The notes under the pieces: generated by a model
The model's database searches: none
Told to the model about the DNA's origin: nothing
The model's input: the letters and a program-made list of their open reading frames with translations, nothing else
Shown: positions 2,403 to 57,221 of the stretch, in pieces
How the letters are laid out: each line of letters opens with the position of its first letter
Numbering within the stretch: the stretch's first letter is position 1
Sequence record: OM319461.1
Length of the DNA stretch: 64,000 nt
Direction: 5' to 3' (one strand)
Made by a program: the position numbers and the translations under genes

Positions 2403-3518
2403 TTACTTCTTCTTCTCAGTACCAGTACTTACCATTAGGGCAGCCGCACCCAAGAAGCGTAACTGTAGCTGGATCATCTTGTCGACGCCGCTGATAAGCT
2501 GCATCACCCACTTCGTATCCAGACCGTCAGTCGAGGTGCTTTCGTCCTCGGCCCACTTGTCGATCTCGAGATTGGTTTTATCTAGTGCCAACCAAGAACG
2601 ACCAATGGCTTCTGCCATGCTCGCAACTTCCGATTCTTTTCCTGTTAGGACAATGCCTTTGGACTTCTCTTCTGGGCGAGATACCATCGTAGTAGGAAGT
2701 ATTATCGTCTTGCTCTCTGTAACAATAGCACAGCCATTGTCAACCAAATAAGCATAATAGACATCTGTGTGAGTTTCACTATCAATCGTTTGTGTTTTAC
2801 TAGAAATCTTGCTCATTTCTTCTAGCCAAACTTTACCAAGTTGTTTAGCTGCCAGTGAGTCGTTTAAGCCGTCGACTGAAACCTTGCTGTAGTTTGCCGC
2901 TAGCCCAGGGATCGCATTCACTGTCGCGGCTATGTCCGCGAGAGGGAGGGCTTCTCGCGCAACGCGCTTGACCTTGTAGTCTTTTACATCAAAGCCACCT
3001 AGATTATAAAGAGGTGCGAGTTTATCGGAAGGCTTCACTTCCTTACAAACAAGATCTCCGTTGCGCAAACCAACTGCAACTGTCATCATTTGTTTGTTGA
3101 TCTTTTTGCCTTTAGCACGGAAGCGCTTAACGATACCAGAAATAGCTGCTTTGATTTTAGCAATCAACTTCGCAATGCGGTCTTTAACTCGCTTAACGAA
3201 ACCTTCTTTGCCTTCCGCTTTATTCCATACTTCTTCTGGAACAACACTGTGGAAAGCACTGCATGCAATCTGATATGCATCAGCGTCCATAGATTCGCTA
3301 TCTAGACTGGTGAAACGCTCGACTACATCTAGCGTATTTTCTAGGTTAGCGATTTCGTTTTTCGCGCCTGCAATTTCTAGAAGCTCTGGCATTTCCATGT
3401 TGCTTAGGTAAACCATGTCGGAACGAAGTTCCTCTAGGGTTGCTGTGATTTCTTCTGAGGTGTATTCAGGAGCCGCGTCAAAGTAAGACTCCATATCGAA
3501 AATGTCTTCGATTTGCAT
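2403..3518 (-). CDS. phiKZ-like internal head protein paralog (start MQIEDIF)
   Basis: Acidic N-terminus, AFHSVVPEEVWNKAEGKEGFVKRVKDRIAKLIAKIK motif; start coupled to upstream stop. Confidence 0.7.
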   Translation of the reverse strand: MQIEDIFDMESYFDAAPEYTSEEITATLEELRSDMVYLSNMEMPELLEIAGAKNEIANLENTLDVVERFTSLDSESMDADAYQIACSAFHSVVPEEVWNKAEGKEGFVKRVKDRIAKLIAKIKAAISGIVKRFRAKGKKINKQMMTVAVGLRNGDLVCKEVKPSDKLAPLYNLGGFDVKDYKVKRVAREALPLADIAATVNAIPGLAANYSKVSVDGLNDSLAAKQLGKVWLEEMSKISSKTQTIDSETHTDVYYAYLVDNGCAIVTESKTIILPTTMVSRPEEKSKGIVLTGKESEVASMAEAIGRSWLALDKTNLEIDKWAEDESTSTDGLDTKWVMQLISGVDKMIQLQLRFLGAAALMVSTGTEKKK

Positions 3519-3519
3519 T

Positions 3520-4593
3520 TTATTTACCTTCTTTCTTTTCAATGTTTTTGCCGGCATGCAGGCAAGCGCTACATAGAACTTCGGCGTGTTGAGCCAGTGA
3601 CATGTAGTAGTTAGTCAGATGCATAATTACGGCGTATGTAAAACGAGCAGATTTTTCCATGTCATCACCACCAATGGTCTTGGCAGCAGCAATGGAGCCT
3701 TCTAGTGCGCCGACATCGATGTCGCGAATTGCGACTGATGTATCGTGTGCTGCACGAAGGATTTGTTGAATGTCACTTAGTGGGTAGACCGTATGCTTTT
3801 CGTTCGATAGCTTCTTGGAAAACTCTAAATTAACCTTGCCTTCTTTACGGACTGGATCCCAGTTAAAGTAGTACTTCTGATCAGCATCTTTGTGTAGTGC
3901 ACAAAAACGACCATTGCCATTGCGAACTACAGATGGGAACGAATTGTCAAGGATGTTACCAGTAAAGATCTGGTTTAGTGCTTCTAACGGACTTTCTTTG
4001 ACGATGATGTCATAGACATCTTTTACCACGTCTGAGTTACCAAATGCTTCGATCACGGTATTGGCCTTAACAAAGTCACGACCTTCGTCAACGGATAGCA
4101 TGCGCATGTTTGACGTGAGTTTAAATTCTGTCGATGGGTCAAAAGAATTGATTTCTTCAGCAAGCTGCACTTTCTTAATTAGAGTAGACTCACGACCAGT
4201 AAAGAACAAGACAAAGCCATTGATGATTTTCTGGATTAACTTCATGATCTTTTCATAAAGCTTCTGTGAACCAGATTTAATTTTTTCTAGCAGACCTTTC
4301 TTGTCTTTGCGCATTTCCAGTGGAAGATCAGCAAAGTAAGTCTGTAGTCTTAGGTTCCAAACTTCTTTTGCTTCAATTGTCAAGGAATCGCGCAGCTCAA
4401 GATATTCAGCCAAGTCAACCTCAGCTTTTCTTAGACCACCAAGGGTGGCAAGATCGGTTTCTAATTCCATGCGTTCTTGAACGGACAATAACTCTGGAAT
4501 ATCAACAGGAGCTTGGAGTAAAGCAATGTCGGATTCTGTTAAGATGTATTCACCCTTTAGTTCTCCGGACATATAAGAATCAAAAATACTCAT
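3520..4593 (-). CDS. phiKZ-like internal head protein paralog
   Basis: Acidic N-terminus followed by GLLEKIKSGSQKLYEKIMKLIQKIINGF amphipathic helix. Confidence 0.65.
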   Translation of the reverse strand: MSIFDSYMSGELKGEYILTESDIALLQAPVDIPELLSVQERMELETDLATLGGLRKAEVDLAEYLELRDSLTIEAKEVWNLRLQTYFADLPLEMRKDKKGLLEKIKSGSQKLYEKIMKLIQKIINGFVLFFTGRESTLIKKVQLAEEINSFDPSTEFKLTSNMRMLSVDEGRDFVKANTVIEAFGNSDVVKDVYDIIVKESPLEALNQIFTGNILDNSFPSVVRNGNGRFCALHKDADQKYYFNWDPVRKEGKVNLEFSKKLSNEKHTVYPLSDIQQILRAAHDTSVAIRDIDVGALEGSIAAAKTIGGDDMEKSARFTYAVIMHLTNYYMSLAQHAEVLCSACLHAGKNIEKKEGK

Positions 4594-4603
4594 GACGCTC
4601 TCC

Positions 4604-5020
4604 TTAAATCAGACCAGCTTTGTGCGCTACGTAAAGGTTATCATAACCACGTAGATCAAGACCAGGGTTTGCCGCAGACAATGAGTTAACATAGTCAAGA
4701 GAAACCAGTTTGTTCAAACCACTGTCAGAAACAAACGCAGTGATTGTACCCATCGCCATGTCTTTGAGTAGACGTCGACCTTCTGCCTCGTCACCTGTCC
4801 AGCCGGCAACTTTTGCCATAACGACAGTAGAGCGAGGATAAAGCACGAGTTCGATGTCGACCAAGTTAACAGAAATGGTTTCGGTAAGTTTTACTGTAGC
4901 AGTGCGGCCGCTTGCTACAAATGCAGCCCAGCGTGGGCTACCTTCTTCCCCTTCAATAACATCAAGGCGAACGAATGTTTCTCCGCCGATGTCGTGAATT
5001 GGACGATTAGAATAAGCCAT
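4604..5020 (-). CDS. hypothetical protein, possibly virion-associated (start MAYSNRP)
   Basis: AAGGAG SD before ATG at 5020; first gene of head-protein run. Confidence 0.7.
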   Translation of the reverse strand: MAYSNRPIHDIGGETFVRLDVIEGEEGSPRWAAFVASGRTATVKLTETISVNLVDIELVLYPRSTVVMAKVAGWTGDEAEGRRLLKDMAMGTITAFVSDSGLNKLVSLDYVNSLSAANPGLDLRGYDNLYVAHKAGLI

Positions 5021-16957: not shown

Positions 16958-19900
16958 TTAATTACATAGACGACCCCATGCAGGCTGTTTAGCCGCATCT
17001 GCTGCCATTGGTACGTCATCCGTAACAAAGTCAGTAGGTTGTACATGGTGGTTTGTAACACAAAGAGATGACAGGTCTTGATCGAAAGCCGTACAGTCAG
17101 ACAAGAAACCATCGATAACTTTGATGTAGTTGAATGGTACATCCAACACACTGTTATTGAATGACGTAGCACCTTTTAGGAATGACGTACAATCTTCTAC
17201 CATAGCCATATCGATATCGATCGGTTGGTTGTAGCTTGTACAGCCTTCAAAGAAGCTAGACATGTCAGTAAACATAGTCGACGTGATTTGCAGTACGTTG
17301 TTGAACGCAGTAGCACCTTTCAAGAACGACTTGGCACTCGTAGCAATAGGAACATAAACCACGATGTCATTTGCCAACGATGCACAGCCCATGAATAACT
17401 GGTTAACGTCCAATGCTTGACGAGCACTGATGTTCACCGTACCATTAAGTGATGCACAGTCCTTGAATAACTCTTCAAGACTTGTAGCAATCGTTGCAGA
17501 GAAAGAAACAGGACCAGTAAGCGCAGCACAACCACGGAACATCGCTTTCAGCTTAAGTGCATTAGGAGCTGCAAAAGCAACACCGCCAGCCAAAGCCAAA
17601 GCACCGTCAAACATTTCTTCGCCTTCAATCAAACGAGGGAACACGTAAGAAGTGAAAGGATTGGTTGTTAAAGCAACAGCACCAGCAAACATGCGGTTAG
17701 CAACTTCTAGTGACTGAGGATTCAAACCAGTTGCTTGATCAAATGCTTCCGCACCAGTAAACATCTCTGTGGCTGTCTTCACCGTAGAGAAGTCAATCAC
17801 TAGTGTAGAGTTAAAGACAGGAGCCTGGTAGAACATGCCCTGTGTTGACTCCAGAGTTGTCGCAGCGATTGTTACGGGTGCATTAAACAGAGGTGTATAT
17901 GCAAACATCTCGCCGACGTCAGTAAGTACACCAGAAGTGATTGATACTGCCTGTGTCATAAGTGCCGCAGATTTGAATACGCCCTTAGCTTTAGAAAGCA
18001 ATGGCAAGTTAACCGAGAATACTTGGTTGTAAACAGCCGCGCTTTCAAACATACCAGAGATGTCATTCAGTACTGGAGCATTCAGAGATGGAATCGGCGT
18101 ATCGAATACAGTCGACTCTGCGAACATGCGTCGTGCATTAGCTAGCTTCGTCCATGCTAAACCACTGATGTCTTGGTTGAAGCTTGTGTTACCTTCAAAC
18201 ATACCTTCAGTAGTAACAACACTAGAAACATCCAATTCTGCAATAGATGCATTAAAGGCACCCATGCGTCGGAACATCGCGTCCATGAATTGAACACTTG
18301 ATGTATCCCACTTCGAGATATCGATTGTGCCAGTAGCGCCTTCAAACATCTCGCCCATGTCAACGATCTTGCTAACGTCAAAACCAGATATGTCTTGTGG
18401 AACTTCTGCATAACGATACATACCACGCATTGCAGTAATGAAGCGGAACGAGTAATCACCGTCGAAAACATACTTCGTATCTGGTTCAGAGAAGAAGTAG
18501 TTTAAGTCAGTCAATGTTTCGAAAGCATAACGATCTGCAATACGACGCATTTCTGCATCTAGTTCTGCAAGAACAACAGGATCAGTACCATCTGGAACGA
18601 GCGCTAGCTGACAGATCGGTTGATTGGACTTCTTAGACGCTTTGATAGCAAAGCCTGTTTCAAGATCCAATGTGTCAGAACGAAGCATGCCGACGTTAGG
18701 TACTGCCATGCGCATGTGGTAGTTGTCACCACTGCCTGACTTGTGTACCTTGATGGTTTCCATTTTGTTATCAATGTTTACATAACCACGACCGTTTTCG
18801 TCTTCGCCATAAATACCAAACACACCAGGAACATCAAACACAATGTGGTTGTTGCCCTTTTGGTCAGCAATAAAGCGAACTTCATCACCTGGCTTCTCAA
18901 CTGCTTTTGTACCGCGAGTGTCTTGGAACAGAGAGTACTTGTCCGTAGTATCCCAGAAAGATTCTACTGCATCGGGGATGCGTTTGTCAGTGCGCTCTAC
19001 GTCACAGAAAACACCAGTAATCTTTGTTGCCTGTTCGACATTGGAGTTAGGATCAACATAGGCATAACCTACCTCGATACCATCCTCTGGATTCATGCGT
19101 GTCCAACCTTGGTCACGGAAAGCACCCGCTGCCAAAGCTTTGTCTGTATACCATAGTGCACCGTGCTGGTCATAAATGACCGAGTCTGCTTCATAAGACT
19201 CAAACGGACTATGTGGATTCACAAAAGATTCATAGCCTTCAGCAGAAACCCATTCCTCTGCAACAAACTCAGGACCAGTCATTTCAGTCGGAATTGTAAT
19301 GGTCTCTTCGCCGATAACTGCGCCAGCCGCTGTGAATTCAATTGGGTAACCAGCAATACCTTTTTGTACAAGCTTCGGTGCAGCCGAGGTATCGAGTAGA
19401 ATCGCAGTATTGTTACGCATGAAGTACATGCCAAATGTACCGTCTGCGGCTGTGGTCACGTCTTCGATAAGGTCTGTGTCTTGGTCATAAACCTTTACAG
19501 TACTGTCGGCAGAAACAAAGTAAACCTTGTTTGTACCATCTAGACCAAACAGTGTATTTACACCAGCGAACACTTGCGGGTTGCCAGCAGTGATATTGCC
19601 GAACTGTACAAAACCACTATCAGGAACATATTGGTAAAGTTGGTTGTCAGATGCATCAAGTACCACAGGAAGACCGTTTAGCATTGTGCCTTTAACAGGG
19701 CCGACCAGACTACCTTTAACGTTTGTCCATGTGCCAGCTTCGAAGCGCCATAGCTCAGAGCCAAACCCATCGATCGTGTAGATAACATTATCTTCGATGA
19801 GTACTTGTTGTGCAGTACGAAGGTTACCATCAGGGATAACTGACCAGTCGCCCGTGGTAGCGTCACGCAAATAAAGACCGACACCAGCAGCATTAGCAAG

Positions 19901-20641
19901 TACATTGCCATTGGTGCTATCAATCGCTAAACTTGTAATTTGGTTCCAGTCTGGAGCATTAGCGCCACCAGAGATGTCTACCATATTGAAATCATTGGTA
20001 CCTGACAAGAAAGGCATGCGACTGTCATTCAACAAAGCAACATAATCGCCACGTACGTCGATTGCATCCATAGCACCAGTAAAGCCAACTAGATTGATGT
20101 CTTCAAATGATGCTGGTACAAGTGCCTGATTAACACGCAATACAATCTCTTCGTTGGCCATACCCACGTACTCGCCACTAAAGCTAGCTGTTTTAGCAAC
20201 CGCAGTCAGATCACGCAGTTCGATTAAACCGATAACTTCGTCACGTGTTTTGTTGTAAACCTCAACATCGATCTCTGTAACTGCATCACCAGTCGCACTA
20301 AGAGAAATGTCAAGGTCTACTTCAGCATAACGCGGAAAAGTAAACACACTGGCAATCTCGCCAGTTTGTGCATCGATAGTAGGAGTCGGAGTTTCGCTAA
20401 TGAGGTCGTCATTAGAACCATAGAAAGGATCGCGTTTAGCTTTAACGCTAACTACTGCTTTAAGAATAGCTCCGTCGCGGTTAACAAAGCTACCTGCTGC
20501 GTAGTCCTTCGCTGGATCAAATGCCTCAACAACAGATGGACGCATAGAGGTATTCGTAGATGGGAATAGTACCCAATCCAAGTTCTCACCGCCTTCGCGT
20601 TCTGTTTTCTTTAAACGAATAACAAAATCTTTGTTAGCCAT
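16958..20641 (-). CDS. tail-fibre/adhesin-like protein with C-terminal DUF285 (BspA-family) repeats
   Basis: WDTSSVQFMDAMF, LDVSSVVTTEGMFEGNTSFNQDI repeats; N-terminal CBM5/12-like and propeller-like segments; LFQDTRGTKAV..GDEVRFIADQKGNNH motif. Confidence 0.75.
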   Translation of the reverse strand: MANKDFVIRLKKTEREGGENLDWVLFPSTNTSMRPSVVEAFDPAKDYAAGSFVNRDGAILKAVVSVKAKRDPFYGSNDDLISETPTPTIDAQTGEIASVFTFPRYAEVDLDISLSATGDAVTEIDVEVYNKTRDEVIGLIELRDLTAVAKTASFSGEYVGMANEEIVLRVNQALVPASFEDINLVGFTGAMDAIDVRGDYVALLNDSRMPFLSGTNDFNMVDISGGANAPDWNQITSLAIDSTNGNVLANAAGVGLYLRDATTGDWSVIPDGNLRTAQQVLIEDNVIYTIDGFGSELWRFEAGTWTNVKGSLVGPVKGTMLNGLPVVLDASDNQLYQYVPDSGFVQFGNITAGNPQVFAGVNTLFGLDGTNKVYFVSADSTVKVYDQDTDLIEDVTTAADGTFGMYFMRNNTAILLDTSAAPKLVQKGIAGYPIEFTAAGAVIGEETITIPTEMTGPEFVAEEWVSAEGYESFVNPHSPFESYEADSVIYDQHGALWYTDKALAAGAFRDQGWTRMNPEDGIEVGYAYVDPNSNVEQATKITGVFCDVERTDKRIPDAVESFWDTTDKYSLFQDTRGTKAVEKPGDEVRFIADQKGNNHIVFDVPGVFGIYGEDENGRGYVNIDNKMETIKVHKSGSGDNYHMRMAVPNVGMLRSDTLDLETGFAIKASKKSNQPICQLALVPDGTDPVVLAELDAEMRRIADRYAFETLTDLNYFFSEPDTKYVFDGDYSFRFITAMRGMYRYAEVPQDISGFDVSKIVDMGEMFEGATGTIDISKWDTSSVQFMDAMFRRMGAFNASIAELDVSSVVTTEGMFEGNTSFNQDISGLAWTKLANARRMFAESTVFDTPIPSLNAPVLNDISGMFESAAVYNQVFSVNLPLLSKAKGVFKSAALMTQAVSITSGVLTDVGEMFAYTPLFNAPVTIAATTLESTQGMFYQAPVFNSTLVIDFSTVKTATEMFTGAEAFDQATGLNPQSLEVANRMFAGAVALTTNPFTSYVFPRLIEGEEMFDGALALAGGVAFAAPNALKLKAMFRGCAALTGPVSFSATIATSLEELFKDCASLNGTVNISARQALDVNQLFMGCASLANDIVVYVPIATSAKSFLKGATAFNNVLQITSTMFTDMSSFFEGCTSYNQPIDIDMAMVEDCTSFLKGATSFNNSVLDVPFNYIKVIDGFLSDCTAFDQDLSSLCVTNHHVQPTDFVTDDVPMAADAAKQPAWGRLCN

Positions 20642-20669
20642 TATTAATCTCCAAGAAAAAAATAAAAAT

Positions 20670-20691
20670 GGGAGTCAGTTATCTAACTCCC
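20670..20691 (-). terminator. intrinsic terminator after nrdB
   Basis: GGGAGT...ACTCCC stem plus long U tract. Confidence 0.7.
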
Positions 20692-20717
20692 TTAAAAGGC
20701 GCAAACCACCTATAAAA

Positions 20718-22835
20718 TTAAACGAAGTCTAGGCTATCTAAATCGTCTTCTGAGACGTCAGTGTCTAGATCCCCAGTTAGGTAGTCTGTAATTTCTTCTT
20801 CTTGTGGTGCTACCTGTGTTGAATCAGAACTTAGCCAACCGGACGTAAAGATCCATGGTAGCGGGTTTTCTGTCTGGTCAGGGAACGGAATACCCATTTG
20901 AACAGTAGACATACGAACGTTCGCAATGTAGCGCACAAAGCGCTTGATGTAGTCCGCATTAAGACCAATCAATGAACCGTGTTGGAAAAGATGGTCTGCC
21001 CAATCTTCTTCGTTCTGTACTGCTTGTAGGAAGATACCTTTGAACTCATCAAAGTTCTCATCCCATGCTTCTTTCCATAGCGGTGCTTTACGCAGGACAT
21101 TGATCATGTACTCAGTGCCCTTAAGATGGAGTGCCTCGTCCCTGGCGATCAAACGAATGATGTTACCGTTACCGCGCATCTTTTTCTTTTCTGCAAAAGC
21201 AAAGCTACAAGCAAAGCTCACGTAGAATGCAATCGCTTCCAATGCGTTAACCGTAACCAATGCTTTCAGGACATGGTAACGGTGTTTGTGCATAAACTCT
21301 TCGCTTGGAGTTTCACCGCGATTGAGAATATTGCGACGCTCAGTATTCATGTCGATACATTCGTTGTATGCAGCCGTAAAGAATTCAGCACGTTTGATGA
21401 TTGCAGGGTTAACTGTAATGTCAGAAAGAATTTCTTCTGGGTGGTTAACTAGGTTGCGGATGATGTGCGTGTAAGAACGAGAATGGATCGTGTTACCTGT
21501 AACAGAAACAACGCCATTATATCGAATCAAGAAAGCACCAGTCGAAGTTTCAAGGCAGCGAACCTTGCCTTTATAAGGAACAATTTCTTTCTCAATGGAT
21601 TGGCCATCTTTGGTGTGTCTGGCGACCACATTGATTTCATATACATCCGCATAGGTTTCTTTTCTCTCGTCTTTTCGGACTGCTAAACGAGGAGAGCGTC
21701 CACATAGAGAAGACACGGCCTGTACAATATCGGCATTTTCTTTAACTGTTGTAGTATAACAGAAAGTAGTGCCTGCGTCTTGATGGAAGCGATGACCATC
21801 CCAGTGTGAAACTTCTTCCAGGAACGATTCTGCCCATGGTAAGTTAATCTCTCCTAGTTTGACCCATGAGAAAGTTTTTGGGTCAGGAACATCCGAAAGA
21901 AGTTCGATTGGAATTGAAACCTTGAAGCGTTTTTGGTCGTCTCTCTTGTTATCTGTTAGCTCTGTCAGTTCAAAGCCGCCGTCCAAACAGATTTCTTTTA
22001 GTCGCTCAATCTTACGTTCTTTTTGGAAGCTGAACCAGAATGGAATAGTGCCGCATTTTTCACCGGTGTATCTATTCGATTTAGTTCCATCAGCTTGCAG
22101 TGCAATCAGGAAACGCTCAAGAGGAGTAAGAATTGACGAAGCCTTTTCATTGTACTTAATGAAACCACTGATCGGTGCCAAGTGATGCGCTGCGTATTCT
22201 TGTCGACCAGCTTCATTGAAATAGCGTTTCTGAGTACCATCGTTGCGACGATCGCGATGAATAACCGGCATTCGGTGGTTAGGTGTGACCAGCTGATCAA
22301 ACTGTTTTCCGTTCTTGGATTTGAAATGGACAATGTCACCTTCTACGTCATACTCAGGAACGCGCTTTGGATGTTCGAAGTGAACACTGTCGTCGTCTAG
22401 GTCATAAACTAGACACTGATCTTCGACTGTCACGTCGGCCATGTCCTTCCATCCAGATGTAGTTAGTACTTCTGTACCTTCTGCCAGGCATTCGGAGAAT
22501 GACCAAGTTTCAATCCACGTTTCTAATTCAGGAATAGAAGCAAGCTCAAGGAAAGCCAAGTTAGGACTGCGACCTTGAATAGAATCCAATAGCGTTTGGT
22601 ATTTCAAGTTTTCAGTGAAGATAAAGCGCTCGTGGTCTGTCATCCCTTCAAAGTCAATGCGGTCTTTGGTGATGTTGATTTCTTCAGGTCGCCAGAAGAA
22701 TGCAAGTTGACGGCTAATCAGGCGCTCGAACTCAGGATGTGTCTGTTCATCATAGCGTGCTGTGCTTACTGGTTCACCAAGAAACATTGGTTGGTTAAGG
22801 TAGTCGGTTGGGCCTGACTTAAATACATCTACCAT
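20718..22835 (-). CDS. nrdB: class Ia ribonucleotide reductase beta subunit, intein-containing
   Basis: FFWRPEE, WSFSE|TIHSRSY, EAIAFYVSF, IARDEALH; 372-aa extein after removing intein. Confidence 0.95.
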   Translation of the reverse strand: MVDVFKSGPTDYLNQPMFLGEPVSTARYDEQTHPEFERLISRQLAFFWRPEEINITKDRIDFEGMTDHERFIFTENLKYQTLLDSIQGRSPNLAFLELASIPELETWIETWSFSECLAEGTEVLTTSGWKDMADVTVEDQCLVYDLDDDSVHFEHPKRVPEYDVEGDIVHFKSKNGKQFDQLVTPNHRMPVIHRDRRNDGTQKRYFNEAGRQEYAAHHLAPISGFIKYNEKASSILTPLERFLIALQADGTKSNRYTGEKCGTIPFWFSFQKERKIERLKEICLDGGFELTELTDNKRDDQKRFKVSIPIELLSDVPDPKTFSWVKLGEINLPWAESFLEEVSHWDGHRFHQDAGTTFCYTTTVKENADIVQAVSSLCGRSPRLAVRKDERKETYADVYEINVVARHTKDGQSIEKEIVPYKGKVRCLETSTGAFLIRYNGVVSVTGNTIHSRSYTHIIRNLVNHPEEILSDITVNPAIIKRAEFFTAAYNECIDMNTERRNILNRGETPSEEFMHKHRYHVLKALVTVNALEAIAFYVSFACSFAFAEKKKMRGNGNIIRLIARDEALHLKGTEYMINVLRKAPLWKEAWDENFDEFKGIFLQAVQNEEDWADHLFQHGSLIGLNADYIKRFVRYIANVRMSTVQMGIPFPDQTENPLPWIFTSGWLSSDSTQVAPQEEEITDYLTGDLDTDVSEDDLDSLDFV
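21492..22490 (-). mobile_element. 333-aa intein with LAGLIDADG-type endonuclease
   Basis: Starts CLAEGTEV, ends VSVTGN, +1 Thr; FLIALQADG and FLEEVSHWDG motifs. Confidence 0.92.
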
Positions 22836-22849
22836 TTTTAATTTTCCTA

Positions 22850-23416
22850 TTATTGAATTTCTGTTTCTGCGAAAGTTTGACTTGGAGTTACGGTGATAGT
22901 TGAGCTTGATGTGCTACCGAACATTCCACTTTCGAACATTTGTTTTTGACTGTCACGAGTAAACTCGCCGTTTACCATGAAAGGAACAAGGTCTTTCCAA
23001 TAAAGATCTCTCAGTACAAGTACTTTAAGATTCCACTTCTCGTTGATGACCAGTACATCGCCTTTTGAAAAATCAGGCATCTCTTCCAATGCAATCGCAT
23101 GGGTATTGCCAGCGGAGTCAATTAGCTTTACTTGACGGAACGGGATATCGTCAATGGCTAGCTGTAGTCCATGTACCTGATGATTGTCTCGCTTAGGTAA
23201 GCTAAACATACAAGTGATCGTATCGTGGTATCCTTCATAATAAAGATTGATTAGATGCTCGATAGAATCAGCGTCCTGCCATTCTAAGTGGGCCATGATG
23301 AAGCCAGCCAAACTCAATTCCTGTTTACCACTCACCCACTCAACGATTAGCTTTCCGTCCACTATCTCGATAGGACAAGGGAAGGTGATTTCGGATACTT
23401 CTGCTACTTCAAACAT
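22850..23416 (-). CDS. hypothetical protein (start MFEVAEV)
   Basis: TAATG coupling, GGAG SD. Confidence 0.7.
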   Translation of the reverse strand: MFEVAEVSEITFPCPIEIVDGKLIVEWVSGKQELSLAGFIMAHLEWQDADSIEHLINLYYEGYHDTITCMFSLPKRDNHQVHGLQLAIDDIPFRQVKLIDSAGNTHAIALEEMPDFSKGDVLVINEKWNLKVLVLRDLYWKDLVPFMVNGEFTRDSQKQMFESGMFGSTSSSTITVTPSQTFAETEIQ

Positions 23417-23802
23417 TAGTGACCAACTCCTTTTATTTCCAAGACAAAACCACGAGCCGTGGTTACCATGATACTGCAATAGAACGGACAGGAGATTTCG
23501 TAGTAACGATGCTCGTCTCCATCTGATTCCGTTAGCGTTAGGCGATAGTCATTACGACGCTCACTATCAAGACTGACAAAGCCACAACGATTCTTGTCCT
23601 TAAGGATGGCATTGTTTGCAGCAAGAAACAAACCTTCAATGTCTCTTACGGTACCTAATGCGTCGTGACGTGATTCATAATGAGCCAGTTCGATTAAAGC
23701 GGGAATAGTAATGATTGTGCCATTTGACTTAATACATGGTTCGCCATCGATTTCGATGTGTTCAATGTGACGTGCCGTACACGCATCTACTGAAAAGTCC
23801 AT
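23416..23802 (-). CDS. hypothetical protein (start MDFSVDA)
   Basis: GAGG SD. Confidence 0.7.
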   Translation of the reverse strand: MDFSVDACTARHIEHIEIDGEPCIKSNGTIITIPALIELAHYESRHDALGTVRDIEGLFLAANNAILKDKNRCGFVSLDSERRNDYRLTLTESDGDEHRYYEISCPFYCSIMVTTARGFVLEIKGVGH

Positions 23803-23884
23803 TGTTACCTCTCGATATAAAGAGGCCCCCAAGTTGAAAGTTACCAACCATCTCAGCTCGGGGGCATTAAGCTAAGTTAGTTTA

Positions 23885-26170
23885 TTAGATTTTGCAGCCA
23901 CCACCAGAGCACGACTCATCTTCCTTCTCTACTGAGATTGTTAGACGATCTTCGCCTTGAGGCTGTGTGTTGTGGTAGTAGAGTGTCTTAAGCCCAAATT
24001 TGACTGCTAGTGCCAGGTCAGCCAATAGGCGTTTCACTGGAACCTTACCGTTCGGGAAGTGAGACGGTACATAGTACGTGTTAGCAGAGATTGCTTGGTC
24101 AACAAACTTCTGTAGTACTGCAACCGTATACAAGTAACCGGTGTTGTTTGGCATTTCCCATGCATAGGTGTATGCATCAATGTCAATACCATTCAGTGGC
24201 ACTACAAGTTTCAGAGGACCAGACTTCGATGTCTTGGTGGTTACTTCACGACGAGGTGGTTCAATGCCATTAGTTGCACCACAAACTTGAGAGCTTGTTT
24301 CAGAAGGCATCAATGCAGTTACTGTAGCGTTACGAATACCGTACTTAGCGATGTCTGCACGAAGACCTTCCCAGTCCATGTGTAGTGGTTCGCTAGTAAG
24401 CTGGTCAACGTTCTTGCAGTAAGTATCGATTACCATTTGGCCTTTAGCGTAACGCAAGTTATCAAAACCTTCACAGCGACCAAACTCTTTTGCTAGTTGA
24501 ACAGATGCACTCATCAAGTAGAACTGCATCATTTCCATCTTGCGGTGAGTGTAGTCAAGTGCAGCTTGTTCACCGTACTTCCAGCCGTTCTTTGCCATGT
24601 CCGCAGCATAGTTGATGATACCAACGCCAAGTGGGCGGTATAGATCAACAGATCGTTGTGCGGCTAGCAAAGGATAGTCTTGGTAAGATAGAAGATCATC
24701 AAGAGCACGGATAACAATATCAGCACACTCTTTAAAGTCTTCTTCTGTGTTAAGCTCTAGCCAGTTAAATGCCGATAGTGTACATAGAGCGATCTCTGCG
24801 TTCTCGTCGTGTACACTGTGCTTAAGTGGCTTGGTAGGTAGCGCAATTTCAAGGCACAGGTTTGATTGGCGTACAGGAGCTTTCTCAGGGTCGAATGGAC
24901 CATGGCTGTTTGCATGGTTAGCATCGAACCAGTAGTAACGACCTGTCTGACTACGTTCGTTCAAGAACTCAGTCATGAACTCTAGTGTGTTAACACGAAC
25001 AGACGTGTCTTTCAACAGAGGGTTGTTTTCTGCTGCTTCGTAAAGACGCTTAAATTCTTCGTAGTCATCTGAGAAGAATGCCTTAACAACTTCTGGGATT
25101 TGAGTTGTGTCAAACAAAGTAATCTCACCACGAATACGCTCTAGTAGGAAACGAGAGCCCTGTAGCGAGTAATCCAAATCACGAGCACGTGTTTCATCAG
25201 TACCACGGTTATTCTTCAGTACAAGGAAGTCACGCGCGTCACGGTGGAAGAACGGATAGAATGCTGTCGCACTACCGTTACGAATACCGCCTTGGCTACA
25301 TGAGTTGGTTGCTGCTTCGAACAGTTTGATGAACTGTGTGACACCTGTGTGTCGGCTAGAACCATCACGGATAGGAGAGCCTTTAGGACGGATAGCACCA
25401 AAGTTGATACCGATACCAGCACGCTTAGCTACGTAAACCATAATCGCTGTAGTAGCCGCACCAATGCCTAGGATAGAGTCATCCGATTCAATAACAACAC
25501 AAGAAGAGAACTGACGTAAAGAAGTACGAACACCAGCCATGATAGGTGTAGGTAGAGATACTTTACCAGAAGAAGTTACTTCGTAGAACTTGCGAATGTA
25601 TTCCATGCGCTCTGCATGAGGATATGCACTAAATAGAGTTGCACCAACCAAAAGGTAAATGAACTGCGGAGATTCAAAGATTTCACCTGTGTTACGGTCT
25701 TGTACAACGTACTTGTCGCGTAACTGTGCCATGCCTGCCCAGCCGATGTTTAAGTCGCGGCTATGGTCAATGATGGTTTCTAGCTCGTCTAGTTGTTCAG
25801 GTGTGTAGTGTTCTAACAGAGTGTGGTCGTAACGACCTTGCGTCACCATGCGTTCTACTTGAGAACGAATTGTTGGTGGCTCGAAACCGCCGAATGCTTC
25901 TTTGCGCATTTCGAATAGCTTTAAACGACCAGCCAGGATTTGGTAATCTGGTGCGTCTTTTGTAATAAGACTTACAGCAGCCATGATTAGAGCTTCATGA
26001 ATCTCTGTAGTAGGAATGCCGTCATAAAGGTCAATTGATGCCTTCATGATAACCGCACTTGCAGAAACACCGTGTAGGCCTTCTGCTGCCCAGTCAACAA
26101 CACGACTTACTTTATCTTCAGTGAACTTCTCTTGTACACCTAGTCGTTTTGTAACGTTAATGTTAAGCAT
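23885..26170 (-). CDS. nrdA: class Ia ribonucleotide reductase alpha subunit
   Basis: N-terminal ATP cone, QFSSC, RQSNLCLEI, ALCTLSA, TLYY, C-terminal CSGGGC. Confidence 0.97.
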   Translation of the reverse strand: MLNINVTKRLGVQEKFTEDKVSRVVDWAAEGLHGVSASAVIMKASIDLYDGIPTTEIHEALIMAAVSLITKDAPDYQILAGRLKLFEMRKEAFGGFEPPTIRSQVERMVTQGRYDHTLLEHYTPEQLDELETIIDHSRDLNIGWAGMAQLRDKYVVQDRNTGEIFESPQFIYLLVGATLFSAYPHAERMEYIRKFYEVTSSGKVSLPTPIMAGVRTSLRQFSSCVVIESDDSILGIGAATTAIMVYVAKRAGIGINFGAIRPKGSPIRDGSSRHTGVTQFIKLFEAATNSCSQGGIRNGSATAFYPFFHRDARDFLVLKNNRGTDETRARDLDYSLQGSRFLLERIRGEITLFDTTQIPEVVKAFFSDDYEEFKRLYEAAENNPLLKDTSVRVNTLEFMTEFLNERSQTGRYYWFDANHANSHGPFDPEKAPVRQSNLCLEIALPTKPLKHSVHDENAEIALCTLSAFNWLELNTEEDFKECADIVIRALDDLLSYQDYPLLAAQRSVDLYRPLGVGIINYAADMAKNGWKYGEQAALDYTHRKMEMMQFYLMSASVQLAKEFGRCEGFDNLRYAKGQMVIDTYCKNVDQLTSEPLHMDWEGLRADIAKYGIRNATVTALMPSETSSQVCGATNGIEPPRREVTTKTSKSGPLKLVVPLNGIDIDAYTYAWEMPNNTGYLYTVAVLQKFVDQAISANTYYVPSHFPNGKVPVKRLLADLALAVKFGLKTLYYHNTQPQGEDRLTISVEKEDESCSGGGCKI

Positions 26171-30224: not shown

Positions 30225-32168
<1,944 letters not shown>

Positions 32169-49363: not shown

Positions 49364-50359
49364 ATGCGGAATACATCATTTCCAATTCGTTACTTGGTGG
49401 CTAAAAAAGAACCAGACGATCCAGATAACTCAACCGGCCGCATGATCGCAGACTCGGTGAATGGTCTGATTGACTTGGTTGGTGCACTGGAAGATAATTC
49501 CAGTTGGCCAGATCCAGACCCTTCTGTGGTGGTAAGCAAAGTACATAACTCTGATTACCCATACTTGGCAGGATCTGAGATCCGCACTGCTTTTGGTTAT
49601 TTCCGTTGTATTTCCAACGTACCTGCCAACAGTAACATTAGTTTGACCAACCGTAACTTTTGGGCTTTAACCCACATGCCTGCTGACGGCGGTGCTGCTT
49701 ATGGCGGCATCTATGATGAAGTAAACGGATACCTTGCCAACACAGCAACAGTACGTCTAACGCCGGACAATGTGATTGTCATGCGTGCGCTGGAAGACAT
49801 CGATCCAGGTACACCGTTTGATCCTGCCCAGTGGCAAGTAGACGCTACATACGACCGTGGCGGCATGCAAGACTGGTCTGGTACCTTTGATGATACTGCA
49901 ACATACGACGCTGGTGTTTTTGTAACATACAACGATGGTGTTTATGTATCTAAGGACAAGATCGAAACAGCAGGTCCATTTGACCCTACAGAGTGGGATT
50001 CGGTTTTCCAAGTGAATACCACGACTCTTTTTAACATCAAGTGCTTTATTCAAGACACCACCGATGATGATGAAGAGATCTTTATTGAAGTTGTTACACA
50101 AGACTTTGTCTTTAAGCAAAACTTCCCTAACTCAGTTGCCGTTGCAGCTACAGCTGCCGAAGCAGATACCTCTCTGGTTATCTTGCATGGTGTAACCCAG
50201 ATTGGTACTATCAACTTTGCTGCTGGTAGTACTTCAGGTACGTTTGTTTCTACCGGCGACGTTTCAGTAACAACTGGCGATCTAATCGCTCTAAAACAAA
50301 ACGGTACCGCTGACAAAACACTGGCTAACATTTCCATTACTTTGGAGGGCTTGATGTAA
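49364..50359 (+). CDS. tail-fibre-associated protein with CBM5/12-like repeats
   Basis: AGGAG SD; YDAGVFVTYNDGVY..FDPTEW modules; N-terminus homologous to 60384 gene. Confidence 0.75.
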   Translation: MRNTSFPIRYLVAKKEPDDPDNSTGRMIADSVNGLIDLVGALEDNSSWPDPDPSVVVSKVHNSDYPYLAGSEIRTAFGYFRCISNVPANSNISLTNRNFWALTHMPADGGAAYGGIYDEVNGYLANTATVRLTPDNVIVMRALEDIDPGTPFDPAQWQVDATYDRGGMQDWSGTFDDTATYDAGVFVTYNDGVYVSKDKIETAGPFDPTEWDSVFQVNTTTLFNIKCFIQDTTDDDEEIFIEVVTQDFVFKQNFPNSVAVAATAAEADTSLVILHGVTQIGTINFAAGSTSGTFVSTGDVSVTTGDLIALKQNGTADKTLANISITLEGLM

Positions 50360-51708
50360 TGAGTTTTCTTTTCATCTTTAACGAGTCTCATGGCTTTACG
50401 ACAGAAGCTGGAGTAGGTAATACCGATCACGACCAACGTGTGATACTGAATCCGATCTATCCTCAGTTTCGTGATCCAATGTTCAGTCGTGGTCACGCAC
50501 AGACAGGCAGTCACGCTCTTGGCAAAGGATGGTTTGTAACCGAACCACCTGCGAATACCTCATCGGATATCTGGTTCCATTTTCGTTCTCTTGTTTTGTC
50601 TTCTGGTTCATCAGCTTGGGCATTTACGACTCCTGCTGGTACAGGTCGTCATTTTGAATTGCGGATAGAAAACAGCAGAGCGAGAATTGTCGACTTTGCT
50701 GGTCGTGATGCCTCGGTGGATATAACTGGCTCAGGCGACCAATCGGATTTCGACGTCAAAATCAACTTCGGTACGGGTGCCTTTGAAATTTTCCAAGATG
50801 GTTTATCTAAAGGTAGCGGTACACACTCATGGATCGTTGACATGGGTCTAGACTGTTATCTTAAGTCTGGTCTTCGTGGGGCTGCAAGTACAGCGTTTAC
50901 CGAGATGATCATCACCGAAGCCAAACCTACGATTGGTATGCGCGTCGCTACGCTTGCTCCAGAAGCAGCTGCGTCAGACAATAACCTCGAAGGTGATATT
51001 GCGACAGTTAATGAAGTATCGCTAAGTAACGACGGTATGACTACAGATGGTGCTGGTAACTTTATGTTTGACTATACCGACATTGATGCAGGCATTGACA
51101 TGAGTCAGTACAACATCGCAGCTGTAACGGTATCTACTGTCTCTACGGCCGACGAAACATTTGTTGACAAGTTCGTACAGAACGCAGTTCGCATTAATGG
51201 CAATATCCATGCGCCATATGACTTCCTTGTGTCTGATACGACAAGTGATTCGAAGTCACTAAATACGATCATGACAACAAACCCAGAAACGGGAGCAGCT
51301 TGGACAGAAGCCGACATCAATGCACTAGAAGCTGGCGTTGCTATTGGTCAGCCTGATCTGAAGATTCGTATTGCAAGTGATGGTAGCTTACGCGGATGGC
51401 GTACAGAAGGTAGTACTTTCGGTACCCTGCTTGGTGGTAAAGACGAGTCAATCGTTGATGCATTCTATTATTCTGTGGACAGTGACTACCTGCTACTAAG
51501 TCCAAAGACCGCTAGTGGCGGTTGGCATGGCAGTACGAGCGCACGTATTCATCTGTTGTTTGAAGACGGCACCTACTTTGTTACGAACACCATGTCCTAC
51601 AATACTGGTTTTGGTGGCAGCTTTAAGTCTAGTCGTAACGATACACTAGAAGCCAAGTTCAATGCGAGTGTTGGTCAAGTACTGAATGCTTGGGTAGAAA
51701 CATTTTAA
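50359..51708 (+). CDS. adhesin/fibre paralog 1
   Basis: WFHFR, EMIITEAKPTIGMRV, NPETGAAWTEADINALEAGV. Confidence 0.75.
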   Translation: MSFLFIFNESHGFTTEAGVGNTDHDQRVILNPIYPQFRDPMFSRGHAQTGSHALGKGWFVTEPPANTSSDIWFHFRSLVLSSGSSAWAFTTPAGTGRHFELRIENSRARIVDFAGRDASVDITGSGDQSDFDVKINFGTGAFEIFQDGLSKGSGTHSWIVDMGLDCYLKSGLRGAASTAFTEMIITEAKPTIGMRVATLAPEAAASDNNLEGDIATVNEVSLSNDGMTTDGAGNFMFDYTDIDAGIDMSQYNIAAVTVSTVSTADETFVDKFVQNAVRINGNIHAPYDFLVSDTTSDSKSLNTIMTTNPETGAAWTEADINALEAGVAIGQPDLKIRIASDGSLRGWRTEGSTFGTLLGGKDESIVDAFYYSVDSDYLLLSPKTASGGWHGSTSARIHLLFEDGTYFVTNTMSYNTGFGGSFKSSRNDTLEAKFNASVGQVLNAWVETF

Positions 51709-51718
51709 GGAGTAAGAA

Positions 51719-53077: not shown

Positions 53078-53091
53078 CACAGGAGCCCATA

Positions 53092-54489: not shown

Positions 54490-54501
54490 GAGATTTAATT
54501 T

Positions 54502-55824: not shown

Positions 55825-55873
55825 GTTTAACTGAGGGAGTAAACCTCCCTCTCCTTTTGGAGAAAACAAAATG
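55822..55873 (+). repeat. about 50-bp intergenic repeat with hairpin, copy 1
   Basis: TAAGTTTAACTGAGGGAGTAAACCTCCCTCTCCTTTTGGAGAAAACAAAATG. Confidence 0.9.
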
Positions 55874-57172: not shown

Positions 57173-57221
57173 GTTTAACTGAGGGAGTAATCCTCCCTCT
57201 CCTTTTTGGGGAAAACAAATG
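57170..57221 (+). repeat. about 50-bp intergenic repeat with hairpin, copy 2
   Basis: TAAGTTTAACTGAGGGAGTAATCCTCCCTCTCCTTTTTGGGGAAAACAAATG. Confidence 0.9.

What the first reader, a model, noticed from the sequence alone, without database searches (positions are those of the whole stretch)
21492..22490. Endonuclease-bearing intein inside the di-iron site of NrdB
The 333-aa intein (C1...GN, +1 Thr) sits exactly between E115 and T116 of the E-x-x-H iron-binding helix, so unspliced protein cannot form the radical cofactor. RNR inteins are mostly known from large subunits, so an R2 insertion is less usual. The penultimate Gly replaces the usual His, and the LAGLIDADG motifs are divergent (LQADG, HWDG). 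Splicing could gate dNTP synthesis conditionally, or the endonuclease could cut intein-less competitor phages.
Basis: partly seen in the sequence, partly recalled or inferred. Interest (0 to 1): 0.7.

Follow-up and report, generated by a model that had tools for sequence, protein, structure and literature searches.

The report
Homing intein splitting phage NrdB
A Vibrio phage's ribonucleotide-reductase small-subunit gene carries a self-splicing, endonuclease-bearing protein insert in an iron-binding motif; this insert type is common in phage R2 genes but has two candidate catalytic cysteines, placing it between two known splicing mechanisms.

Summary
Window 21492-22490 (minus strand) encodes a 333-aa intein (Cys1 ... 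Thr-Gly-Asn, +1 Thr). It sits between E115 and T116 of the E-x-x-H iron-ligand motif of NrdB. The window is Vibrio phage C-ZP2022. Its sister phage vB_pir03 lacks exactly these 333 residues.

A high-confidence structure model shows a HINT splicing domain plus a LAGLIDADG endonuclease domain, and both catalytic Asp are conserved across the family.

It is not rare. Hundreds of metagenomic R2 proteins carry a homologous intein, mostly at this site. So do Pectobacterium phages phiTE and CB7 (62% identical, noted in print in 2020, splicing untested). The only characterised relative is the split AceL NrdHF intein at the same site (PDB 6ZGQ), a proven class 3 intein.

It also keeps Cys1. Across 279 relatives both cysteines are near-invariant and none lacks both.

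Most likely it is a constitutively splicing, mobile homing intein. Which cysteine starts splicing is unresolved. Conditional gating of dNTP synthesis has no supporting evidence. Verdict: new member of a known kind, modest interest.

The parts
20718..22835 (-). nrdB precursor ORF (705 aa; CZP2022_28), a class Ia RNR beta subunit interrupted by the intein
22491..22835 (-). N-extein, residues 1-115, ending WSFSE (E115 is the first ligand of the E-x-x-H motif)
21492..22490 (-). Intein, 333 aa: a HINT splicing domain split by a LAGLIDADG endonuclease domain
22488..22490 (-). Cys1 (block A), the N-terminal nucleophile of class 1 inteins; present in 275 of 276 relatives that have a residue here
22269..22286 (-). 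Block B, T69-P-N-H72-R73-M74: TxxH, plus Arg at B:11 and Met at B:12 as in AceL NrdHF (S65, H68, R69, M70)
21606..22142 (-). LAGLIDADG homing-endonuclease domain (about intein residues 117-295; boundaries approximate, taken from the model's secondary structure)
22086..22100 (-). LAGLIDADG motif 1 (LQADG; the Asp is invariant in alignment A2)
21795..21806 (-). LAGLIDADG motif 2 (HWDG; the Trp-Asp is invariant in alignment A2)
21522..21563 (-). Block F (VRCLETSTGAFLIR), with Cys312 at F:4 (codon 21555-21557); it aligns with the essential branch-point Cys124 of AceL NrdHF; no His at F:13
21492..21500 (-). Block G end, T331-G332-N333 (Thr at G:5, Gly in place of the penultimate His, terminal Asn)
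20718..21491 (-). C-extein (257 aa plus stop), starting T-I-H: Thr+1 nucleophile, then H118 and Y122 of the spliced protein

Best explanation
The 999-bp insert is a full-length homing intein in the nrdB gene of Vibrio phage C-ZP2022.

After translation, the HINT domain excises the 333 residues and joins E115 to T116. This restores the E-x-x-H iron-ligand helix and yields a 372-aa class Ia R2 protein. Splicing is most likely autocatalytic and constitutive.

The nested LAGLIDADG endonuclease most likely cuts intein-less nrdB alleles, such as that of vB_pir03, at the same DNA site. Recombinational repair then copies the intein in during co-infection.

The intein belongs to a very large, mainly phage and metagenomic clade with these shared features: Cys1, TxxH-R-M in block B, Cys at block F:4, and a (T/S)-G-N end without either C-terminal His. 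The split AceL NrdHF class 3 intein is an Ala1, endonuclease-less offshoot of the R2 branch.

Inferred chemistry:
- Cys1 makes the first thioester, as in class 1.
- Cys312, which sits between the two splice junctions, can take over or relay the acyl group to Thr+1.
- Arg73 at B:11 substitutes for the missing penultimate His during Asn333 cyclisation, as shown for AceL NrdHF.

Shown here: anatomy, homology, fold, residue conservation and patchy distribution. Inferred: actual splicing, endonuclease activity and the order in which the nucleophiles act.
For: Delimitation:
- vB_pir03 provides an intein-less ortholog that defines the insert exactly.

Homology and fold:
- PDB 6ZGQ (AceL NrdHF) matches at E 2e-7 with the single sequence and 1e-18 with the family profile, over both halves.
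- In that alignment Cys312 lies on the position of C124 and SVTGN lies on SVTG(A).
- The model has pLDDT 94.7 and pTM 0.92.
- Foldseek hits are TliVMA, PI-SceI, PhoVMA and PI-PfuI at E 1e-15 to 1e-10, 6ZGQ at TM 0.79-0.82 by target length, and I-DmoI for the middle domain.

Residue conservation over 279 full-length relatives:
- His B:10 279, Cys1 275 of 276, Cys F:4 264 (Gly in 15).
- Gly G:6 274, Asn G:7 275, Arg B:11 216.
- LAGLIDADG Asp 270 and 267.

Evidence that the host gene stays functional:
- NrdB exteins of C-ZP2022 and vB_pir03 give dN/dS = 0.03 at dS = 1.1.

Evidence for mobility:
- The intein is present in C-ZP2022 but absent from syntenic vB_pir03.
- Intein identity exceeds extein identity across hosts: 62-69% against 44-54%, and 42-46% against 21-27%.
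- The same clade occurs in NrdE, NAPRT, primase, terminase, RtcB, PhoH and polymerase genes of unrelated phages.
- The vB_pir03 target site matches the C-ZP2022 junction at 80 of 90 nt, and both 90-nt stretches encode the same 30 residues.

Published biochemistry of the relative AceL NrdHF:
- It splices fast and cleanly.
- C124 is essential.
- G145H abolishes activity.
- R69 aids the C-terminal step.

Penultimate Gly is functional in a mycobacteriophage intein.
Against: - No experiment exists for this intein or for its 62%-identical Pectobacterium phage homologs; the CB7 paper states that splicing was not tested.
- Pfam HINT and LAGLIDADG models do not hit this sequence itself; only 8-12 of the 70 relatives are hit. 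The CB7 paper scored the homolog as 'intein with no homing endonuclease'.
- The time since acquisition is unknown, so the low extein dN/dS does not strictly prove that splicing works.
- The order of nucleophile use is pure inference. The nearest characterised relative uses the F:4 Cys, not position 1.
- Three synonymous differences lie within 9 nt of the insertion point in vB_pir03. They could make that allele resistant to cleavage.
Confidence: 0.8

Rival explanations
1. Pure class 3 mechanism. Cys312 at block F:4 attacks the N-terminal scissile bond directly and forms the branched thioester, as in AceL NrdHF. Cys1 is not the initiating nucleophile and is conserved for some other reason, such as packing, backup or redox.
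For: - The closest characterised homolog, at the same insertion site, is a proven class 3 intein. It has the same M-C-T triplet, the same TGN end and the same Arg at B:11.
- Cys F:4 is 95% conserved and Thr or Ser at G:5 is 90% conserved. The AceL paper notes that a highly conserved G:5 Thr is otherwise seen only in class 3 inteins.
- Natural Ala1 members retain Cys F:4: P0077, and Corynebacterium phage Darwin at the same site.
Against: - Cys1 is present in 275 of 276 relatives. In canonical class 3 inteins the triplet co-varies with the absence of an N-terminal nucleophile.
- 15 relatives have Gly at F:4. All of them keep Cys1 and every other catalytic residue, so Cys F:4 is dispensable when Cys1 is present.
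- Block B has the class 1 TxxH pattern.
Confidence: 0.3
2. Conditional intein. Splicing is gated by redox state or metal, for example through a reversible Cys1-Cys312 disulfide. R2 maturation, and therefore dNTP supply, would then be switched after translation.
For: - Two thiols are predicted to converge on the same scissile carbonyl. In 6ZGQ the modelled F:4 thiol is 3.0 Å from it.
- There is precedent. In the class 3 Msm DnaBi1 intein, the catalytic Cys forms an intramolecular disulfide under oxidation and splicing is reversibly inhibited.
- The insertion lies in the oxygen-activating di-iron site.
Against: - No direct evidence was found.
- AceL NrdHF splices to completion within minutes over wide pH and temperature ranges.
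- The same dual-Cys signature occurs at many unrelated insertion sites and host genes. It is therefore a property of the intein clade, not an adaptation to RNR.
- Insertion in conserved catalytic motifs is what a homing endonuclease that needs a conserved DNA target would produce anyway (general knowledge of the field, not tested here).
Confidence: 0.12
3. The intein still splices but its endonuclease is no longer active. It would be a vertically inherited passenger, not a weapon against intein-less phages.
For: - Pfam LAGLIDADG models do not detect the domain in this sequence.
- The intein's GC content (44.2%) equals that of its flanks (44.1-44.4%), so it is not a very recent foreign arrival.
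- No flanking co-conversion tract is evident in the identity profile against vB_pir03.
Against: - Both catalytic Asp, two Lys and the domain length (309-339 aa in all 115 R2 inteins measured) are conserved.
- The intein is more similar between hosts than the exteins are.
- It is present in one and absent from the other of two sister phages.
Confidence: 0.15
4. The insert inactivates nrdB, either as a dead intein or a pseudogene, and the phage relies on host RNR.
For: No experimental proof of splicing exists, and the C-terminal motif (no His at G:6 or F:13) is atypical.
Against: - The 705-codon frame is intact.
- Every catalytic position matches the functional AceL NrdHF pattern.
- Extein dN/dS is 0.03.
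- The co-located nrdA is intact.
Confidence: 0.03

Closest known systems
AceL NrdHF split intein (PDB 6ZGQ; Hoffmann et al. 2020, PMC7891396)
   Same: - It has the same insertion point, between the Glu and the +1 residue of the first E-x-x-H motif of an RNR beta subunit (SIRDE | SMHVE there, WSFSE | TIHSR here).
- It is homologous over both HINT halves (E 1e-18 with the profile).
- It shares (S/T)-P-N-H-R-M in block B, Cys at F:4, the T-G-N end and the absence of both C-terminal His.
   Different: - AceL has Ala1, is naturally split, and has a free-standing GIY-YIG gene in place of a nested endonuclease. It sits in a class Ib NrdHF fusion and has Ser+1.
- The C-ZP2022 intein has Cys1, is contiguous, carries a LAGLIDADG domain, sits in class Ia NrdB and has Thr+1.
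- The mechanism is proven for AceL only.
NrdB inteins of Pectobacterium phages phiTE, CB7 and PcCB7V (Certrevirus)
   Same: - phiTE has the same site (E|TIH), the same C1 ... TGN|T ends, Cys at F:4 and 62% intein identity. The CB7 and PcCB7V inteins are 62% identical by tblastn; their junctions were not aligned here.
- The CB7 intein is listed in print as an NrdB intein shared with phiTE.
   Different: - The host exteins are only about 50% identical.
- Motif 1 reads IQAEG (Glu for Asp).
- The paper scored it as lacking a homing endonuclease and did not test splicing. The model made here for the C-ZP2022 homolog indicates that a LAGLIDADG domain is present.
Canonical class 3 (WCT) inteins: MP-Be DnaB, Msm/Mch DnaBi1, Dra Snf2
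   Same: Cys at F:4, Thr at G:5, frequent LAGLIDADG domains and a proposed phage origin.
   Different: - They lack a position-1 nucleophile, have Trp at B:12 and usually keep the penultimate His.
- No significant sequence match appeared between the family profile and any other solved intein; Msm and Mch DnaB intein chains were not among the matches listed at E<=1.
Class 1 HEN-bearing inteins with solved structures (PI-SceI, TliVMA, PhoVMA, PI-PfuI)
   Same: Overall two-domain architecture, Cys1, TxxH in block B and a terminal Asn; these are the best global fold matches.
   Different: - Sequence identity is 8-13%.
- By general knowledge of intein motifs, they have Asp at F:4 and His-Asn at the C-terminus.
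- PI-SceI has an extra DNA-recognition region; the present intein is compact at 333 aa.
Mycobacteriophage Bethlehem gp51 (RDF) intein, and other phage class 1 inteins without the penultimate His (Kelley et al. 2016, PMC5050341)
   Same: A phage intein with a penultimate Gly that splices; mutating Gly to His impairs splicing.
   Different: Different host gene. Whether it has Cys at F:4 was not checked here.

Membership tests
Intein (HINT protein-splicing domain) | An in-frame insertion absent from orthologs, with precise boundaries | tested here: met
   vB_pir03 NrdB lacks exactly residues 116-448.
Intein (HINT protein-splicing domain) | Blocks A, B, F and G with a nucleophile at position 1 or F:4, His at B:10, a terminal Asn and Cys/Ser/Thr at +1 | tested here: met
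   C1, H72, C312, N333 and T+1 are present and conserved in 279 relatives.
Intein (HINT protein-splicing domain) | HINT fold | tested here: met
   The model has pLDDT 94.7. TM is 0.79-0.82 to 6ZGQ, and the top hits are solved inteins.
Intein (HINT protein-splicing domain) | Actual excision and extein ligation | not testable with these tools
   This needs protein expression, western blot or MS. There is only indirect support: extein dN/dS of 0.03.
LAGLIDADG homing endonuclease (intein-nested, monomeric two-motif type) | Two alpha-beta-beta-alpha-beta-beta-alpha half-domains packed through two LAGLIDADG helices | tested here: met
   The model's secondary structure shows this layout (H128-139 and H222-235 in model numbering). 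Foldseek matches I-DmoI, I-Tsp061I and the HEN domains of PI-SceI and PI-PfuI.
LAGLIDADG homing endonuclease (intein-nested, monomeric two-motif type) | An acidic residue at the C-terminal end of each LAGLIDADG helix | tested here: met
   D134 (LQADG) and D231 (HWDG) are present. Asp is found in 270 and 267 of 279 relatives.
LAGLIDADG homing endonuclease (intein-nested, monomeric two-motif type) | Match to curated sequence models (Pfam LAGLIDADG_3 and relatives) | tested here: not met
   This sequence has no hit. 8 of 70 family members hit PF14528.
LAGLIDADG homing endonuclease (intein-nested, monomeric two-motif type) | Site-specific cleavage of the intein-less allele | not testable with these tools
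   The candidate target is the vB_pir03 nrdB junction, 80 of 90 nt identical to the C-ZP2022 junction.
Class 1 inteins | Cys/Ser/Thr at position 1 that forms the linear (thio)ester | tested here: met
   Cys1 is present. This shows the residue only; its use in catalysis was not tested.
Class 1 inteins | Usual assisting residues: Asp at F:4 and the penultimate His at G:6 | tested here: not met
   F:4 is Cys312 and G:6 is Gly332. The literature treats these as typical rather than obligatory residues.
Class 3 inteins | Cys at block F:4 as the branch-point nucleophile | tested here: met
   Cys312 aligns with the essential C124 of AceL NrdHF. This shows the residue only.
Class 3 inteins | Absence of a Cys/Ser/Thr nucleophile at position 1 | tested here: not met
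   Cys1 is present, and in 275 of 276 relatives.
Class 3 inteins | W-C-T triplet (B:12, F:4, G:5) | tested here: inconclusive
   The triplet here is M-C-T. This is the same variant as in the proven class 3 AceL NrdHF, where changing Met to Trp abolishes activity.
Class 3 inteins | Block F branched thioester intermediate | not testable with these tools
   This needs C1A, C312A and T+1A mutants and trapping of the intermediate.

The most novel reading that the evidence does not exclude
The C-ZP2022 NrdB intein represents a very large, overlooked 'dual-nucleophile' intein clade. In it, either Cys1 or the block-F Cys can start splicing, or the two act in series as a three-station acyl relay: Cys1, then Cys F:4, then +1.

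Class 3 splicing would then have arisen from such inteins more than once, simply by loss of Cys1. Examples are AceL NrdHF, Corynebacterium phage Darwin and the Rothia-type Ala1 members. This would contradict the published view that class 3 arose once.

The paired thiols could additionally make maturation of the oxygen-dependent R2 subunit sensitive to redox state.
Probability: 0.3. Interest if true: 0.6.

Novelty: new member of a known kind. Interest (0 to 1): 0.35.

Why it matters
For phage biology the finding is ordinary. It is one more homing intein in a nucleotide-metabolism gene, useful as a marker of gene flow between jumbo Vibrio phages and other phages, and its endonuclease may exclude intein-less relatives in mixed infections.

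For intein biochemistry it is a convenient natural test case. It is a contiguous, endonuclease-bearing, Cys1-containing sibling of the only characterised variant (MCT) class 3 intein, at the same extein site.

Simple point mutants would show whether class 1 and class 3 chemistry coexist in one active site. They would also show how class 3 inteins originate.

The family could also supply new splicing tools that tolerate Thr+1 and lack both C-terminal histidines.

Tried and rejected
- **Group I intron or other RNA element:** Rfam found nothing at E<=0.1 in 20000-24000, and the reading frame is continuous. Rejected.
- **Pfam on the intein itself:** only a sub-threshold RraB hit, which is spurious. 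Family-wide scanning recovers Hint_2, Intein_splicing, LAGLIDADG_3 and Hom_end_hint in a minority of members.
- **PDB sequence search with the C-terminal 58 aa alone:** nothing meaningful. The family profile was needed to align block F and G with 6ZGQ.
- **Co-conversion tract or foreign composition:** identity to vB_pir03 is flat at 80-93% per 100 nt around the junction, and GC content equals that of the flanks. No signal.
- **Second intein of this clade in the window:** none in the six-frame HMM scan. tblastn found one place in the whole C-ZP2022 record.
- **Literature on inteins with both Cys1 and Cys F:4:** none found in the held library. No paper on phage C-ZP2022 is held. Tori & Perler 2011 (J Bacteriol 193:2035) is not held. 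From memory it may discuss class 3 inteins with atypical position-1 residues; this is unverified.
- **Distance between Cys1 and Cys312 in the model:** not measurable, because model coordinates are not exposed to scripts.
Full report
**Source and anatomy**

The window is the first 64 kb of Vibrio phage C-ZP2022 (OM319461.1). This is a 288-kb jumbo phage of V. parahaemolyticus, and window coordinates equal record coordinates.

The minus-strand ORF 20718..22835 encodes 705 aa and is annotated as RNR class Ia beta subunit. Pfam Ribonuc_red_sm matches it in two separated stretches.

The NrdB of the syntenic sister phage vB_pir03 (MT811961) is 372 aa and 94% identical. It aligns without any gap except for residues 116-448 of the C-ZP2022 protein.

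The insert therefore spans 21492-22490, or 333 aa. It begins with Cys, ends Thr-Gly-Asn and is followed by Thr. The junction reads WSFSE | ... | TIHSRSY.

The host protein matches E. coli R2 structures at E about 1e-126, with the same motif and register. By that alignment and the standard E. coli R2 numbering (recalled, not tested), the intein separates iron ligand E115 from H118 and from the radical Tyr122.

**What the insert is**

A profile of 70 homologous inserts (alignment A2) matches one solved protein strongly. That protein is the AceL NrdHF intein, PDB 6ZGQ, at E 1e-18 over both the N- and C-terminal HINT halves.

An AlphaFold model built on A2 is very confident (pLDDT 94.7, pTM 0.92). 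Foldseek results:
- The best global matches are the endonuclease-bearing inteins TliVMA, PI-SceI, PhoVMA and PI-PfuI (E 1e-15 to 1e-10).
- 6ZGQ is the best match for the splicing domain (TM 0.79-0.82 by target length).
- The monomeric LAGLIDADG enzyme I-DmoI matches the middle domain.

Their Asp residues are invariant in A2 and are present in 270 and 267 of 279 relatives.

The 'divergent LAGLIDADG' reading is therefore supported by fold and conservation, even though Pfam models miss this sequence. For the same reason, the published label 'intein with no homing endonuclease' for the 62%-identical CB7/phiTE homolog is probably an artefact of profile sensitivity.

**How common it is**

A word-indexed search with the intein region returned 310 protein clusters at E<=1e-3. 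All of the best 120 are Ribonuc_red_sm proteins, with 29-68% intein identity.

In nearly all of these the flanks are E | (T/C/S)-x-H, which is the same site.

An exhaustive profile search found 19,023 representatives at 50% clustering with E<=1e-3, and 3,317 with E<=1e-30. This reflects a very large intein clade.

Among cultured phages:
- phiTE, CB7 and PcCB7V carry a 62%-identical intein, at the same site in phiTE.
- Corynebacterium phage Darwin carries an Ala1 version at the same site.
- Pseudanabaena phage PA-SR01 and Tenacibaculum phage PTm5 carry relatives in the second E-x-x-H motif of R2.
- More distant members sit in NrdE, NAPRT, primase, terminase, RtcB, PhoH, polymerase and ThyX genes.

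'R2 inteins are unusual' therefore does not hold at the sequence-database level.

The AceL NrdHF intein is inserted in the same motif (exteins SIRDE | SMHVE). It was shown biochemically to be a class 3 intein:
- Its block-F Cys124 is the essential first nucleophile.
- It has Met, not Trp, at B:12, Thr at G:5, and neither the F:13 His nor the penultimate His.
- G145H kills it.
- Arg69 at B:11 helps the C-terminal step.

The C-ZP2022 intein has the same set: T-P-N-H-R-M in block B, Cys312 aligned on C124, and T-G-N at the end. Unlike AceL, which has Ala1, it also has Cys1.

Published definitions of class 3 require the absence of a position-1 nucleophile. The intein therefore fails one defining feature of class 3. 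It also lacks the typical class 1 assisting residues, Asp at F:4 and His at G:6.

**Family-level pattern**

Over 279 full-length relatives:
- Cys1 is present in 275 of 276.
- Cys at F:4 is present in 264, and Gly in 15.
- Gly at G:6 is present in 274.
- Asn at G:7 is present in 275.
- No member lacks both cysteines.

In a FastTree phylogeny, one 13-tip subclade (support 0.91) is nested among dual-Cys R2 inteins. It holds 12 Cys1/Gly-F:4 members and the single Ala1/Cys-F:4 member.

Natural 'single knock-outs' of either thiol therefore exist, and each presumably still splices. This suggests that either thiol can suffice. That is an inference from sequence, not a demonstration.

**Function and mobility**

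The exteins of C-ZP2022 and vB_pir03 differ mostly at synonymous sites (dS 1.1, dN/dS 0.03). nrdB has therefore stayed under strong purifying selection, which argues that the intein splices.

Across hosts the intein is more similar than the normally slow-evolving R2 exteins: 62-69% against 44-54%, and 42-46% against 21-27%. Together with its presence in one and absence from the other of two sister phages, this indicates horizontal spread by homing.

The intein-less vB_pir03 junction is identical to the C-ZP2022 junction at 80 of 90 nt, and both stretches encode the same 30 residues. It is thus a plausible target. However, three differences lie within 9 nt of the insertion point, and their effect is unknown.

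No compositional or co-conversion signal of a recent event is visible.

**Mechanism: what I commit to**

1. The precursor cannot assemble the di-iron-tyrosyl cofactor, because the ligand helix is interrupted. This is an inference from R2 structure.
2. The HINT domain excises itself constitutively soon after folding.
3. Cys1 most likely performs the initial N-to-S shift. The class 1 TxxH apparatus is present and Cys1 is near-invariant.
4. Cys312 lies between the two junctions and serves as an alternative or relay acyl carrier to Thr+1.
5. Asn333 then cyclises, helped by Arg73, without a penultimate His.
6. The excised intein acts as a LAGLIDADG endonuclease on intein-less nrdB alleles.

Steps 2 to 6 are inferred from homology. 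I put about 0.8 on the overall picture and about 0.3 on the rival that Cys312 alone initiates (pure class 3).

Redox or metal gating is possible in principle. Precedent exists in the class 3 Msm DnaBi1 intein, whose catalytic Cys forms a disulfide under oxidation. Nothing here supports it specifically, and the dual-Cys signature is not specific to RNR hosts.

**Novelty and verdict**

The intein is a new member of a known kind. It belongs to a widespread R2 E-x-x-H-site family. That family was already noted in Pectobacterium phages in 2020, though untested and mis-scored as endonuclease-less, and its split relative is well characterised.

The modest added value has two parts. One is the link made here between the AceL NrdHF class 3 intein and its contiguous, endonuclease-bearing, Cys1-containing relatives. 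The other is the observation that this large clade carries both candidate nucleophiles.

I found no paper in the held library addressing that combination. One key paper, Tori & Perler 2011, could not be read.

Noticed in passing
window 50359-58496 (+): Six tandem ORFs (449, 452, 465, 440, 433 and 425 aa; CZP2022_65-70, all annotated 'hypothetical') are divergent paralogs of one another (21-31% identity, E 1e-5 to 1e-51). None has a Pfam hit. The record's notes name vB_pir03 hypothetical proteins as their matches.
   Followed up: partly
L009 (Corynebacterium phage Darwin, NC_042086.1 52045-54216): Its R2 gene carries a relative of the intein at the same first E-x-x-H site (FME | A...SGN | CVH). 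It has Ala1, retains Cys at F:4 and has Cys+1. It is a cultured-phage candidate for a contiguous class 3 (or class 2) version of this family. The record notes only 'ribonucleotide reductase + intein'.
   Followed up: partly
L007 (Pseudanabaena phage PA-SR01) and L008 (Tenacibaculum phage PTm5): Their R2 genes carry inteins of the same clade (28-30% identity; Cys1, Cys F:4, x-G-N end). These are inserted in the second iron-ligand motif (ARDEA | CH and IDEN | CH). Both E-x-x-H helices of R2 are therefore intein targets.
   Followed up: partly
L003 (Pectobacterium phage phiTE nrdB, 2653-4716): The phiTE intein has IQAEG (Glu instead of Asp) in LAGLIDADG motif 1. The CB7 homolog was published as an 'intein with no homing endonuclease'. 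The fold model of the C-ZP2022 homolog suggests that this annotation is wrong.
   Followed up: partly
L004 (Staphylococcus phage Romulus nrdE fragment) and L005 (Citrobacter phage Tr1 NAPRT): Inteins 33-35% identical to the C-ZP2022 one sit in unrelated genes. They share Cys1, Cys at F:4 and a C-G-N | S end, with Cys rather than Thr at G:5. The Romulus RNR alpha gene is additionally broken up by HNH and homing-endonuclease genes.
   Followed up: partly
proteins P0019-P0033 (818-985 aa) and P0062, P0077, P0088, P0092: In these metagenomic R2 proteins the homologous intein starts far downstream (for example residue 382), or the profile matches in 2-3 stretches. This implies two or more inteins or extra domains in one R2 gene.
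   Followed up: no
proteins P0074, P0078, P0080: In these R2 hosts the residues before the intein read NLKYQ | C, not ...E | C, while the C-extein still starts C-L-H. Either about 35 N-extein residues are missing or the local alignment is off.
   Followed up: no
window 16958-20641 (-), 22850-23802 (-), 30225-32162 (-): A 1227-aa BspA-type leucine-rich-repeat protein lies immediately downstream of nrdB. Two small hypothetical ORFs separate nrdA (23885-26170, no intein) from nrdB. An NAD-dependent DNA ligase with a full domain set is encoded at 30225-32162. No tRNA genes are found in the window.
   Followed up: no
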